Source of the DNA: Trichosphaerium sp. ATCC 40318
Taxonomy: Eukaryota; Protista; Tubulinea
Direction of reading: 5' to 3'
Assembly (NCBI GenBank): GCA_038496445.1
Contig: JALMLS010000334.1
Coordinates: forward strand, 62,001 to 126,000
Length of the DNA stretch: 64,000 nucleotides
The notes beneath the pieces are model-generated. The model saw nothing but the letters and a program-made list of their open reading frames with translations, made no database searches and was not told the DNA's origin. Below are positions 42,937-46,329 of this stretch, piece by piece; the first letter of the stretch is position 1, and each line of letters starts with the position of its first letter. The position numbers were made by a program, and so were the translations under genes.

Positions 42937-43181
42937 AATAAATAAACCATTTTTTTAACAATGAACAGTTGGTTATTGTATAGTGTTCCAACTGTCCGGA
43001 GCTATCACGAAGTGCAAATGAATTATTTTGAACATTTGTTTAAAGTCAAGGGTTATCTTGTAGTGACTAGCTTTAAGAGAAAATCAGGAGAAGTACACGT
43101 GAGCAAGCTGTTCATTGAAACGAAGCTTATATTTAGCAATTTTTTCTGTATTGTGGAGCTCTTTTATTTACTGAGTTACAC

Positions 43182-46064
43182 ATGCAAGTATCATACTACG
43201 CACAAGTAAGCAAGGTTGATTGGAATAACATCCCAGAGATGGAAGAGAAGCCAAAAGTTTATTTCCCATTCGCTAAGAACAAGAAATGCGTTATTCGTAT
43301 TGTAGGAGGTTAGTATAATAGAATGCACGCGTAATTAGAGCTGTTGATCCTAATTATACGATTTAAGGTAAGGAAGTACCACAGAGGTATCTGCGTGATC
43401 TAGAAGCGCGAGATAACTTCATAAACGTTACATCGCGGTCTAAAAAGTTTGGCACTGAGTTTTCTCCGTTCTTCTTGGGTCCTTTAACGCTCTACGATGG
43501 TACTAACACATATAATACATCAAGAGTGTTTACTAAACTATTTTTGTAGATTACAAATGCGAAAACATGGAAAACGCTTGGCAATACGCCAAAGTTTATA
43601 AAGAATACACTGACGAGAATGGTGAAGTAATTTTGATAGTTTAACATTTCTTAACGGCTTTTTTTAGGTGATCCTACCGCTGATTACTTTAAATGGGCCA
43701 AGAGTGGGTGGGATAACCCTAAAGCTGTCAGATTTCCAATGGGTAGAGGTGCTAAACCTGAGTACTCTTACTGGGAAGGAGGAAAGTACTTGTATGTACC
43801 CGCCAGAAAGAGAATCTACGCACCTCTTTGTACGCTAATTTTTCAGAAATGTAAAAAACTTGTGTTGTTTTTTTGATCAAGTCACATTGCTCAGTGACTC
43901 GCTGATTTCAAAATATAGATGCCAATGAAGTAGTCAAACGATCTTGGTTTGATAAACTGAAAAAAATAACTACTCAACACAAATATGTCATGTTCTGGGT
44001 AAGTGTCAAATGTGCAATGTGTCAAAAAATTTTTACATTTTGACTTACTTCGTTTGTTAAATAGGATTTCGATGGCTATGATCACTTAAAATACGGATAC
44101 GACTATGGTTAGTAACATTACTATACAGAGTGAGTATTTTTATCTGACATCTTCGTAGAGCATGTGCTTAATAACCCTAAGAGAAAAATGGGACATGCTT
44201 TTGTTTTGGCAATGTTGTTGGATAACCAAAAGTTGTGGGAAGTTGAAACAACGTACGGTGGTGTAAATAATACAATAGAGTCAAATTATTTCCTTTAATA
44301 CTAAAAATGGATATTTTACTGACATTTTCGATAGACTAAAAGAAAGAAAGACAGATTGGGAAGAAGAAAAACGTATAATTAAAATATCGCCTTCTTTGGG
44401 TGAGACACAATTACACGTGCACTTCTATAACCCTACACCTACTTTATGGAACGATGAACTTGCTGAAAGTTTCTCTAAACATGTCACAGCGAAGAACTGG
44501 AGATGGTTGAACCACAAAAAAGATTCTCTTGTTTTAGAGTTTTATCACTTGGAGGTTGCTGGTACACATACCAACTTGAGTTAAAACGAAGTTACTCACA
44601 TATGTAATAGAACTTTGGGTAGCTAAAACAAGATTGACATGGGACGAATTTAAGCAGTGTGCAGTGTAGAAAACGCGAAATAAAATCGTTGACTTTTTTT
44701 TGGTCTGTTTTTTTTTGTTTGTTGAAAGAATTCGATGGGTGTTTAGAGAAGGAAGGGTTTTCATGGCTACTTCATCTCCAGCTGCATTACATAAATGTAC
44801 AGAAGACTCCAAGTTTAAAAAAACGAGCATTGAGACATTTGATGAGGCAATAAAACGATTTGGGCTATTTTACAGGTTAAGAAGGTTATATAGTAGCTCG
44901 TGCGCGTAACCAGCCGTTAGGTCTCGTTTTGAATCGAATAACTGTTTTTTATTGTACACAAAGACAGTTGATGTCCGTATACAAGCTGGGCCAAGGTAAG
45001 GACGCGTATGTAATCGTTAACTAGCAATAGTTGTAACGTTCTCGCTGTTTCTTTCCTACAATTACCTATTCGTTCTTATTTACGCGTGAGCTTGTAGTTG
45101 CGGACTTGTAGCGTTACGAATGGGTGGAGAATATCTAGAAGGCAACGTAAACCGCCAAGACACATTCAAAGACTTACTGGACAGGGCCAAAGCCAAAGGT
45201 ACCTCATCATTTTGGCATCTCGTTGCTCAATCAATGTGTAGGATTTTCCAAACAAGGAGAAATGTTCAACGCCCAACATATGGCGACTCTTGCAGTTAGT
45301 ACCAAAATTACTCTTTTTAATAGTTGTACATAACATCAAACTTTAATATTAGGCTGAATATTATGGATTAAATCCCACTGTAGTCGAGGGAAATGGCACG
45401 TGATTTTTTTTTGGTTTTTCTTTACAATTATTGCACGTTGCACTCTTATTCAAATTTATTACTAGAATTCTCTGCTGCAAATGTGCTGAGGTAAGTGTTG
45501 AGTATACGAATACGTTACTGAATTATTTTTGATAACAAAAAGGAGCTTATCTCAAAATCAGCTTATGCTTGTACCTTATGATACTGACGCAAACAGCTCG
45601 CCAGGGACACATAATGGTATAGCATAGCTATATGTTTTTCACTTTTAAGCATGCTATAGGTCATAGAGCACATTGGGCATTGATTACTGGCTTTCTATTC
45701 CCACTATCCGAACCACAACAATCGGTTTTCAAACATCACGCTACACATGTTGTTTCACGATATAATGCTACTTTTATATGCACAGATACTCTTCCAGATG
45801 AAGTTATGAACGGTGCTCATATTCTTGAAGAACAACTGTTCGTTGTATGCCGACAGAGCAAGTCAAAGTGGGCAGCGATATGGCCATTAAGTGACTTAAC
45901 AAAGTCAAATAGAAACTTAAAAGAAGCACCTCCTGATAAGCTTGCTGAGAAGACGTACAAGATTTTGATGCTTACAACTTTAATGATTTTCTTTTAGGTA
46001 CGTGATGCCAAAAACTCTTGAGGATTTATGCTCAAAAGCAGTAGTATTATCAAAAACCTTGTAA
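43182..46064 (+). CDS. Fusion of DUF6939-like domain, linker domain and ACTMAP (C19orf54)-like cysteine protease
   Basis: INVTSRS..FSPFFLGP..ENAWQYAKVY..GHAFVLAMLL spliced in frame to QAGPSCGLVAL..GEMF..VPYDTD..HRAHWALITG..RQSKS. Confidence 0.8.
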
Positions 46065-46329
46065 AAAAAACCCTCTTACTTGCCATGAAGCCATTCTGTT
46101 TTAGTACCTTTTTCTACACCAATACAACAGACGCAACTGCTCAAAAATGTGAAGTACACCCGCTAGAGTAGCTATATTAAAGCCAGCGAACGAACCGTTG
46201 AACTTTCCGTTATTTTTCGTGTTTAGTTGATTTCCAATTGAGAAAATAGACGGAAAGCAAACAGAGCACAACTACAACTCAAACAACAAGATATTTTACT
46301 TGTAGGCGATTCTTTTATTGTACGTTGGT

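What the first reader, a model, noticed from the sequence alone, without database searches (positions are those of the whole stretch)
43182..46064. Fusion of a DUF6939-like domain with an actin maturation protease (ACTMAP)
Seen: I traced an unbroken spliced frame from ...GHAFVLAMLLDNQKLWEVET through TLKERKTDW...IRWVFREG to IQAGPSCGLVAL, with ACTMAP-type Cys (PSCG) and His (AHW) motifs intact. Established: ACTMAP cleaves the acetylated N-terminal Met of actin and is normally standalone. Inference: the N-terminal domain belongs to DUF6939, which I recall from bacteria, phages and giant viruses and which may be NADAR-related. If so, the fusion could couple actin maturation to ADP-ribose removal or sensing, for example as a defence against actin-modifying toxins. 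That function is speculative.
Basis: partly seen in the sequence, partly recalled or inferred. Interest (0 to 1): 0.75.

Follow-up and report, generated by a model that had tools for sequence, protein, structure and literature searches.

The report
Two neighbouring genes, not a fusion
This amoeba locus holds two ordinary, separate genes side by side: a phage-like DUF6939/NADAR-type enzyme gene that ends at its own stop codon, and a standalone actin-maturation protease (ACTMAP) gene. The proposed fusion protein is not supported by the sequence.

Summary
Exons 2-7 of the upstream gene map in order onto a DUF6939 profile, and DUF6939 has a NADAR-like fold. The downstream gene is an ACTMAP orthologue with its Cys (SCG) and His (AHW) intact.

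The "unbroken spliced frame" does not hold:
- **Upstream gene closes on its own.** It has 8 exons (319 aa) and ends at TAA 44582-44584. An AATAAA follows 95 nt later, then a T/GT-rich tract.
- **ACTMAP starts on its own.** Its ATG is at 44763, it has 9 exons (281 aa), and an in-frame TAG lies upstream.
- **The bridge needs a very poor splice.** The donor AGA|GTTTTA (44539) scores below all 15 local donors and below 73 of 77 exonic decoy GTs. The intron would be 190 nt, against 43-102 nt locally.
- **Relatives are standalone.** All detectable ACTMAP relatives are 343 aa or shorter. Two paralogue types of the DUF6939 gene in this genome have no protease attached.
- **The 178-nt gap is normal here.**

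No RNA from this species could be reached, so co-transcription or a rare fused isoform is not excluded.

What remains is modest: an intron-rich, phage-like (58-64% identical) DUF6939 gene with an orphan 82-aa tail, next to a non-animal ACTMAP.

The parts
43182..43308 (+). Gene A exon 1: start ATG, a lineage-specific N-terminal extension of about 30 aa, then the first beta-strand of the DUF6939 domain
   Evidence: First ATG after an in-frame stop; GT donor at 43309. No match to the DUF6939 profile except its last residues.
43368..43499 (+). Gene A exon 2 (DUF6939 profile positions 13-43; 'TSRS...FSPFF')
   Evidence: 25.5 bits against a profile of 44 relatives; splice sites.
43550..43621 (+). 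Gene A exon 3 (profile 45-67). Carries 'ENAWQYAK', a Glu...Lys pair seven residues apart (Glu codon 43570-43572, Lys codon 43591-43593)
   Evidence: 29.8 bits. E51 and K58 are invariant in the family. The spacing matches the NADAR catalytic E88/K95 (PMC11543638).
43668..43829 (+). Gene A exon 4 (profile 69-121), the most conserved part
   Evidence: 81.8 bits. tblastn found 75 phage records, the best 58.5% identical over 53 aa.
43919..43998 (+). Gene A exon 5 (profile 124-148)
44065..44107 (+). Gene A exon 6 (profile 149-162), with the invariant 'DFDGY' (Asp-x-Asp)
44159..44252 (+). Gene A exon 7 (profile 165-186; 'RKMGHAFVLAMLLDNQ'). The DUF6939 domain ends here, where the phage proteins end
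   Evidence: 28.0 bits. 81% identical to the C-terminus of P0093. The phage ORF L002:2297-2872 ends at the same point.
44335..44584 (+). Gene A exon 8: an orphan 82-aa C-terminal tail, then stop codon TAA at 44582-44584
   Evidence: Frame and stop. No relatives in any search. Only one copy in the genome.
44679..44724 (+). AATAAA (44679-44684) followed by a T/GT-rich tract (44694-44724). Read as the polyadenylation signal and downstream element of gene A
   Evidence: Neighbouring gene ends also carry AATAAA or ATTAAA 1-112 nt after their stop. The function is inferred, not shown.
44539..44728 (+). The 190-nt 'intron' the fusion reading needs (donor AGA|GTTTTA, acceptor GAAAG|A). Judged not to be an intron
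   Evidence: Donor -3.6 bits, acceptor 5.1 bits. It is longer than all 15 local introns (43-102 nt) and contains the stop codon and the AATAAA.
44763..44875 (+). Gene B (ACTMAP-like) exon 1, starting at ATG 44763. An in-frame TAG lies at 44667-44669 upstream
   Evidence: The N-terminal length before the catalytic Cys (62 aa) lies within the range seen in relatives.
44921..44995 (+). Gene B exon 2 ('NNCFLLYTKTVDVRIQAGP')
   Evidence: Matches the conserved 'NCYLSFGQTV.PIIQ.GP' block of P0129 and P0134. The preceding intron is 45 nt.
45098..45198 (+). Gene B exon 3, with the catalytic Cys (codon 45099-45101, 'SCGLVAL')
   Evidence: PF21646 positions 11-40, 15.4 bits.
45242..45294 (+). Gene B exon 4 ('GFSKQGEMF')
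   Evidence: Own-genome PF21646 hit at positions 41-62.
45353..45395 (+). Gene B exon 5. It must use a GC donor at 45396 to reach the next exon in frame
   Evidence: The alternative is the GT donor at 45400 with the micro-exon skipped (274 aa).
45466..45490 (+). Gene B exon 6, a 25-nt micro-exon ('FSAANVL')
   Evidence: Matches the conserved 'ILxxLL' helix that precedes 'LLVPYD' in relatives (read by eye).
45543..45616 (+). Gene B exon 7 ('LMLVPYDTDANSSPG')
   Evidence: PF21646 positions 86-107, 22.1 bits; 23.6 bits in the own-genome search.
45660..45954 (+). Gene B exon 8, with the catalytic His (codon 45671-45673, 'HRAHWAL')
   Evidence: Exhaustive search: 26 relatives, 29-48% identical.
45998..46064 (+). 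Gene B exon 9 ('YVMPK...') and stop TAA
   Evidence: Matches the C-terminal 'YVIP.GG...' of relatives.

Best explanation
There are two independent, head-to-tail protein-coding genes in a compact amoeba genome. Gene A (43182-44584, 8 exons, 319 aa) encodes a complete DUF6939 domain, plus a lineage-specific N-terminal extension of about 30 aa and an orphan 82-aa C-terminal tail. By fold and by conserved motifs (Glu-x6-Lys and Asp-x-Asp) it is a NADAR-superfamily enzyme. It most likely acts as an N-glycosidase or ADP-ribosyl-glycohydrolase on a nucleobase-linked (ADP-)ribose. It was most likely acquired from a phage or bacterium, and later gained introns and duplicated. It terminates at TAA 44582-44584 and is probably polyadenylated after AATAAA 44679. 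Gene B (44763-46064, 9 exons, 281 aa) is a standalone ACTMAP orthologue, a papain-like Cys/His protease. It most likely removes the acetylated initiator Met from this amoeba's actins, which begin Met-Asp-Asp. Shown here: the gene models, the stop codon, domain identities, fold similarity, conserved residues, and the standalone architecture of relatives. Inferred: the polyadenylation site, both enzyme activities and the horizontal origin.
For: Gene A closes cleanly on its own, with 7 GT..AG introns of 46-89 nt. AATAAA lies 95 nt after the stop, followed by a T/GT-rich tract. Gene B has its own ATG, with an in-frame stop upstream, and gives 281 aa. Relatives are 249-320 aa and carry only PF21646. 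The bridging donor is worse than all true donors and than 73 of 77 decoys, and the intron would be 190 nt against 43-102 nt. All 18 frame-compatible pairs score below every true intron. The 178-nt gap compares with 245 nt upstream. The closest ACTMAP relatives sit on mRNA-sized contigs of 1.0-1.4 kb with no second gene. DUF6939 relatives are 182-291 aa among the 240 rows listed, and nearly all carry PF22075 only. Paralogues of gene A in this genome end 6-7 aa after the domain. ACTMAP is single copy. DUF6939 identity. NADAR fold. Actin N-terminus MDD.
Against: No transcript of this species could be retrieved for either gene, so separate mRNAs are inferred, not observed. The acceptor-like site at 44728 scores well (5.1 bits). 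Donors in this genome are degenerate (GTACAA, GTACCT and even a probable GC donor), so a weak donor is not impossible. The word searches cannot see proteins longer than about 335 aa, so DUF6939 fusions elsewhere were not excluded from the DUF6939 side.
Confidence: 0.8

Rival explanations
1. The two genes are co-transcribed on one primary RNA (operon-like), and are then separated by polyadenylation and a splice at the 44728 acceptor, or translated from a bicistronic RNA. The proteins remain separate, but their expression is coupled.
For: The gap is short (178 nt) and both genes are on the same strand. A good acceptor-like site lies 34 nt upstream of the ACTMAP ATG (5.1 bits).
Against: The upstream neighbour pair has a similarly short gap, so short gaps are simply the local norm. 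The T-rich tract is equally well explained as the downstream element of a poly(A) site. I did not look for a spliced-leader RNA. The closest ACTMAP relatives show no DUF6939 neighbour.
Confidence: 0.1
2. This is a true fusion, constitutive or as an alternative isoform. A splice from within exon 8 (donor 44539 or 44562) to 44729-44752 removes the stop codon and yields a DUF6939-tail-ACTMAP protein of about 590 aa.
For: Frame-compatible GT..AG pairs exist. The best is donor CTG|GTACAC at 44562 (5.1 bits) to 44752 (1.4 bits). No 319-aa product of this species was found in the protein collection, which would also fit a product too long for the length filter.
Against: All candidate pairs score below every true intron and are 115-379 nt long. 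The putative intron contains a stop, an AATAAA and a T/GT-rich tract. No ACTMAP relative exceeds 343 aa. The paralogues lack any protease.
Confidence: 0.07

Closest known systems
ACTMAP / C19orf54, actin maturation protease (Pfam PF21646 ACTMAP-like_C; Haahr et al. 2022, as cited in PMC11735805)
   Same: Gene B shares the conserved blocks (Q.GP.CGLVAL, SKQGEMF, LLVPYD.D.N..P, GH.AHWA, QGKSK..WPL..L..SN.NL, YV.P). It keeps the Cys and His, has the same size class (281 aa against 249-320 aa), and is standalone. The amoeba's actin begins Met-Asp-Asp, like animal beta-actin.
   Different: It is only 29-48% identical to any relative over its largest exon. It sits in an amoeba, whereas a 2025 review describes this maturation step as found only in animal cells (PMC11735805). 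Its activity is untested.
DUF6939 (Pfam PF22075), an uncharacterised family of about 190 aa in phages, bacteria and metagenomes
   Same: Exons 2-7 cover profile positions 13-186 of 189 in order. Of the 23 residues invariant across 44 relatives, the amoeba keeps 22; the only change is Tyr90 to Phe (read). Identity to the closest members is 58-64%.
   Different: It is eukaryotic and carries 7 introns. It has an N-terminal extension of about 30 aa, an insertion of about 12 aa after the first strand, and an orphan 82-aa tail. It belongs to a small multi-copy family in this genome.
NADAR superfamily (DarG1 antitoxins, phage AdfN, YbiA; PMC11543638, PMC11825919)
   Same: The three best structural matches of a DUF6939 model (pLDDT 97) are NADARs: Z 9.0, 7.1 and 6.9, with 136-150 of 191 residues aligned. 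Foldseek's top two hits are also NADARs. The Glu-x6-Lys and Asp-x-Asp/Glu motif spacing is the same. There is a weak Pfam co-hit to NADAR-DarT1 (P0174). Orphan copies in phages are a known NADAR theme.
   Different: Sequence similarity is below family thresholds: 14.6 bits against a cut-off of 27, and no PDB sequence hit with the profile. The tested AdfN-Bas60 phages are not among the DUF6939 hits. No DUF6939 member has been assayed, and I found no paper that mentions the family.

Membership tests
ACTMAP (PF21646) | Match to the family profile above the curated cut-off (27 bits) | tested here: met
   Exon by exon: 22.1 and 15.4 bits. In the own-genome six-frame search, 23.6 bits, reported as 27.7 'with its neighbours in the frame' and marked over the cut-off. 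The pieces map in order onto profile positions 11-40, 41-62, 82-109 and 108-121.
ACTMAP (PF21646) | Catalytic Cys and His of the papain-like dyad present | tested here: met
SCG at residue 63 and HWA at 166 of the 281-aa model. They align with CG[LMI]VAL and GHKAHWA of relatives.
ACTMAP (PF21646) | Standalone single-domain architecture | tested here: met
   The gene has its own ATG with an upstream in-frame stop. Relatives are 134-343 aa, and the nine ACTMAP relatives scanned carry PF21646 only. Their mRNA-sized contigs carry a single gene.
ACTMAP (PF21646) | Cleaves the acetylated N-terminal residue from actin | not testable with these tools
   Only the presence of a plausible substrate was checked: 5 of 6 top actin loci encode Met-Asp-Asp-Val-Gln....
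DUF6939 (PF22075) | Full-length match, in order, to the family profile | tested here: met
   Pfam's own model gave no hit on single exons and found nothing in the six-frame search, including in the control genomes. A profile built from 44 PF22075-positive relatives matched exons 2-7 in order, summing to about 180 bits. The joined protein was not scanned.
DUF6939 (PF22075) | Family-invariant residues kept | tested here: met
   Of the 23 invariant columns in A1, the amoeba differs only at Tyr90 (Phe). This was read from the exon translations.
NADAR superfamily | YbiA-like/NADAR fold | tested here: met
   Tested on the phage relative P0001 (about 58% identical to the amoeba in exon 4), not on the amoeba protein itself. 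8bat Z 9.0 (rmsd 4.2 over 150 aa), 2b3w Z 7.1, 8bau Z 6.9; the next rows are Z 6.1 or lower and align only about 80 aa. Foldseek probability 0.92.
NADAR superfamily | Sequence-profile membership (PF08719 / PF22397) | tested here: not met
   NADAR-DarT1 scored 14.6 bits against a cut-off of 27 on phage Tr1. The profile found no NADAR chain in the PDB sequence search. The relation is therefore at superfamily or fold level only.
NADAR superfamily | Catalytic Glu and Lys (E88 and K95 in E. coli C7 NADAR) plus an acidic residue (D171/E173) | tested here: inconclusive
   The motif spacing matches (E51-x6-K58 and D153-x-D155; PMC11543638), and the amoeba keeps these residues. I could not obtain a residue-level structural superposition.
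NADAR superfamily | ADP-ribosyl-glycohydrolase or N-glycosidase activity | not testable with these tools
   No DUF6939 member has been assayed, as far as the paper library shows.

The most novel reading that the evidence does not exclude
Adjacency is not accidental. A share of transcripts splices from the end of gene A's tail into the ACTMAP leader (or the pair is expressed as one unit). This would give this amoeba a NADAR-like / actin-maturation-protease bifunctional protein, or a co-regulated pair, for example one linking actin N-terminal processing to reversal of an ADP-ribose-type modification.
Probability: 0.08. Interest if true: 0.6.

Novelty: new member of a known kind. Interest (0 to 1): 0.2.

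Why it matters
As a fusion it would have been a new enzyme architecture, but the sequence argues against that. Three modest points remain:

1. **DUF6939 assignment.** This family has thousands of members and none has been characterised. It can now be placed in the NADAR superfamily by fold and motif, which gives a testable activity.

2. **Phage-like gene in a eukaryote.** An amoeba carries a small, intron-rich family of these genes, one with an orphan tail. This looks like horizontal acquisition followed by intron gain.

3. **ACTMAP outside animals.** An intact ACTMAP orthologue and Met-Asp-Asp actins occur in an amoeba. This bears on the statement that this actin-maturation step is restricted to animals.

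Tried and rejected
- **Pfam and PHROGs on single exons of gene A** gave nothing useful.
- **Pfam DUF6939 model in six frames on the genome** found nothing, including in the control genomes, so the blank is uninformative.
- **The exon-8 tail** has no relatives in viral contigs (44), metagenome contigs (46), PDB sequences (45), the word search (47) or the ESM Atlas (best score 0.83, at noise level; 62). The weak Pfam hit to Nuc_deoxyri_tr2 (E 0.08) was not pursued and is treated as chance.
- **Retrieving this species' own transcripts or proteins** failed three ways:
  - the exhaustive search with the largest ACTMAP exon found nothing above 48% identity;
  - a word search with a phage protein listed only phage-like members (25);
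  - a profile of P0093 plus three exon rows also listed only proteins of 182-291 aa (71).
  Local ranking tests showed that a phage query could not bring an amoeba-type protein into the 120 rows shown.
- **Possible identity of DUF6939 with the tested phage anti-DarT NADAR AdfN-Bas60** was rejected: no Bas60-62 or other Escherichia phage appears among the hits at E 1e-5 (55).
- **A first alignment that included all the exons** was misaligned by MAFFT and was discarded (69).
- **Joined models.** The joined spliced proteins were never used as a query for any search or fold. Exons were searched one at a time by reference. In the sandbox they were concatenated only to check frame, length and motif positions.
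Full report
**What is there**

The window is a compact, AT-rich eukaryotic genome segment (G000, 70 Mb). Earlier notes on this genome call the organism a marine amoeba. Reading the three forward frames across 43150-46100 gives two same-strand genes with short GT..AG introns.

Gene A has eight exons: 43182-43308, 43368-43499, 43550-43621, 43668-43829, 43919-43998, 44065-44107, 44159-44252 and 44335-44584.
- It runs from the first ATG after an in-frame stop to TAA at 44582-44584.
- It encodes 319 aa.
- Its introns are 46-89 nt.

Gene B starts at ATG 44763, and an in-frame TAG lies upstream at 44667-44669. It has nine exons: 44763-44875, 44921-44995, 45098-45198, 45242-45294, 45353-45395, 45466-45490, 45543-45616, 45660-45954 and 45998-46064.
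- It encodes 281 aa.
- Its introns are 43-102 nt.
- Exon 2 and the 25-nt exon 6 were placed with the help of relatives.
- One intron (45396-45465) needs a GC donor. The alternative, a GT donor at 45400 with the micro-exon skipped, is also in frame (274 aa).

**Identity of the downstream gene**

- Single exons hit Pfam ACTMAP-like_C (PF21646) at 15.4 and 22.1 bits.
- The six-frame search of the whole genome finds this family only at this locus. The pieces map in order and pass the cut-off when combined.
- The exhaustive search with the largest exon found 26 relatives. They are 29-48% identical and 134-343 aa long, and the match always lies toward their C-terminus.
- Nine of the ten relatives scanned score 93-150 bits on PF21646 and carry no other domain.
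- The Cys of SCGLVAL (residue 63) and the His of HRAHWAL (residue 166) are intact.
- The closest relative is a 277-aa gene on a eukaryotic chromosome. It also appears on three RNA-sized contigs of about 1.3 kb that carry that gene alone. A second relative behaves the same way.
- The literature describes ACTMAP as the protease that removes the acetylated initiator Met from actin before NAA80 acts (PMC11735805; PMC11615838).
- Five of the six best actin loci in this genome encode Met-Asp-Asp-Val-Gln-Ala-Leu-Val-Val-Asp-Asn-Gly, using a 10-nt first exon. A plausible substrate therefore exists.

**Identity of the upstream gene**

- Single exons give no Pfam or PHROGs hit.
- Exon 4 alone finds 75 phage records by tblastn, at up to 58.5% identity. 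They come from huge uncultured phages and from Citrobacter, Klebsiella, Erwinia, Dickeya, Ralstonia and Yersinia jumbo phages.
- The Citrobacter phage Tr1 protein passes Pfam's cut-off for DUF6939 (PF22075, 31.2 bits). It also has a weak co-hit to NADAR-DarT1.
- The family is very large. One search gave 1,349 proteins at E 0.001 or better, and another gave 3,372 at E 1e-10 or better. All listed members are 182-291 aa. Nearly all carry PF22075, and one is a named Bacillus 'DUF6939 family protein'.
- A profile of 44 members matches amoeba exons 2-7 in order at positions 13-43, 45-67, 69-121, 124-148, 149-162 and 165-186 of 189. The scores sum to about 180 bits. Exons 1 and 8 do not match.
- Of the 23 invariant family residues, only Tyr90 is changed, to Phe.
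- Identity to the nearest members is 58-64%.
- Phage proteins end where exon 7 ends. Exon 8 is therefore an added tail.
- That tail has no detectable relative anywhere I could look, and it occurs only once in the genome.

**The NADAR relationship**

- An AlphaFold model of the phage relative P0001, built with 44 sequences, has pLDDT 97.
- Foldseek ranks Geobacter NADAR (8bat, probability 0.92) first and E. coli YbiA second.
- The search that does not depend on Foldseek puts three NADAR structures on top: 8bat (Z 9.0, 150 aa aligned), 2b3w (Z 7.1) and 8bau (Z 6.9). The generic phosphatase-like folds below them align only about 80 residues.
- NADAR catalysis uses a Glu and a Lys seven residues apart, plus an Asp/Glu pair (E88, K95, D171/E173; PMC11543638).
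- DUF6939's invariant E51...K58 and D153-x-D155 have the same spacing, and the amoeba keeps them (ENAWQYAK and DFDGY).
- At sequence level the link is below threshold. It is therefore a superfamily-level assignment, and the activity is inferred.
- Orphan NADARs in phages remove ADP-ribose from DNA to defeat DarT1 (PMC11825919). The phages tested in that work are not among the DUF6939 hits.

**Is it a fusion?**

The sequence argues against it.

1. Exon 8 reads straight into TAA.
2. That frame is closed by a TAG 94 nt upstream of the ATG.
3. I listed every GT..AG pair that could join exon 8 to the ACTMAP frame without a stop, and found 18.
   - I scored them with matrices built from the 15 local introns.
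That is below all true donors (leave-one-out minimum -0.8) and below 73 of 77 exonic decoy GTs.
   - Its intron would be 190 nt, against 43-102 nt locally.
   - The 18 pairs sum to between -5.2 and 6.5 bits, whereas true introns sum to 9.4-18.5 bits. All 18 would be 115-379 nt long.
4. The supposed intron contains an AATAAA 95 nt after the stop, followed by a T/GT-rich tract. This is the usual layout of a polyadenylation site. Neighbouring gene ends carry similar signals.
5. The 178-nt gap is no shorter than the local norm: the gap between the upstream lysyl-tRNA synthetase-like gene and gene A is 245 nt.
6. No ACTMAP relative is fusion-sized.
7. Two further paralogue types of DUF6939 in this genome (three loci) have other exon layouts. 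Their frames close 6-7 residues after the domain.

**Limits**

I could not reach any RNA or predicted protein of this species for either gene.

The site at 44728 does look like an acceptor (5.1 bits). I therefore keep co-transcription at about 0.1 and a real or minor fused isoform at about 0.07.

As required, the spliced models were searched exon by exon by reference. The joined proteins were never used as a query or folded. In the sandbox they were concatenated only to check frame, length and motif positions.

**Verdict**

The family assignments are right: DUF6939, NADAR-like and ACTMAP. The central claim, one fused protein, is not supported.

The locus is best read as two ordinary neighbouring genes. 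What is mildly new is:
- a eukaryotic, intron-rich, phage-like DUF6939 gene with an orphan tail;
- a fold-level assignment of DUF6939 to the NADAR superfamily;
- an intact ACTMAP in an amoeba.

Noticed in passing
window 45396-45465 and 45466-45490: The ACTMAP gene appears to need a GC-AG intron (donor ATG|GCACGT) to include a 25-nt micro-exon. That exon's peptide (FSAANVL) fits the conserved helix before 'LLVPYD' in relatives. A GT donor 4 nt downstream would instead skip the micro-exon and stay in frame (274 aa against 281 aa), so alternative splicing is possible.
   Followed up: partly
G000:C166:129353-129667 (-) = L007; G000:C511:14924-15064 (-) = L009; G000:C103:13402-13542 (-) = L010: There are further intron-bearing DUF6939 paralogues in the same genome. 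L009 and L010 gave identical match coordinates and near-identical scores in the local profile scan. Their exon layouts differ from the window gene's, and they lack the C-terminal tail. The phage-like family has therefore expanded in this amoeba.
   Followed up: partly
window 43368-44252: The amoeba DUF6939 domain is 58-64% identical to phage and metagenome proteins, yet it is split by six introns. This points to horizontal acquisition followed by intron gain. No tree was built, so donor and timing are open.
   Followed up: partly
window 44336-44581: The 82-aa C-terminal tail of gene A is an orphan: no relatives turned up in any collection or library tried. The only hint is a sub-threshold Pfam match to a nucleoside 2-deoxyribosyltransferase-like family (E 0.08).
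   Followed up: partly
L020-L024 (G000:C64, C40, C1, C102, C44): The conventional actin genes share a 10-nt first exon (ATGGATGACG) followed by an intron of roughly 105-115 nt, giving the N-terminus Met-Asp-Asp-Val-Gln. The genome gives 128 exon-level matches to the actin family.
   Followed up: partly
window 44763-46064: An intact ACTMAP orthologue occurs in an amoeba, although a 2025 review (PMC11735805) states that this actin maturation pathway is found only in animal cells. I did not search for an NAA80-like acetyltransferase in this genome.
   Followed up: no
window 44694-44728: A T/GT-rich tract ends in an acceptor-like AAAG, 34 nt upstream of the ACTMAP start codon. It could be a poly(A) downstream element, a splice acceptor for a 5'-UTR intron, or a trans-splice site. 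These were not distinguished.
   Followed up: no
P0174 and P0207: One DUF6939 protein (P0174) carries precomputed hits to both PF22075 and the NADAR-DarT1 family PF22397, which fits the fold result. P0207 is a 291-aa member with an unexplained extension.
   Followed up: no
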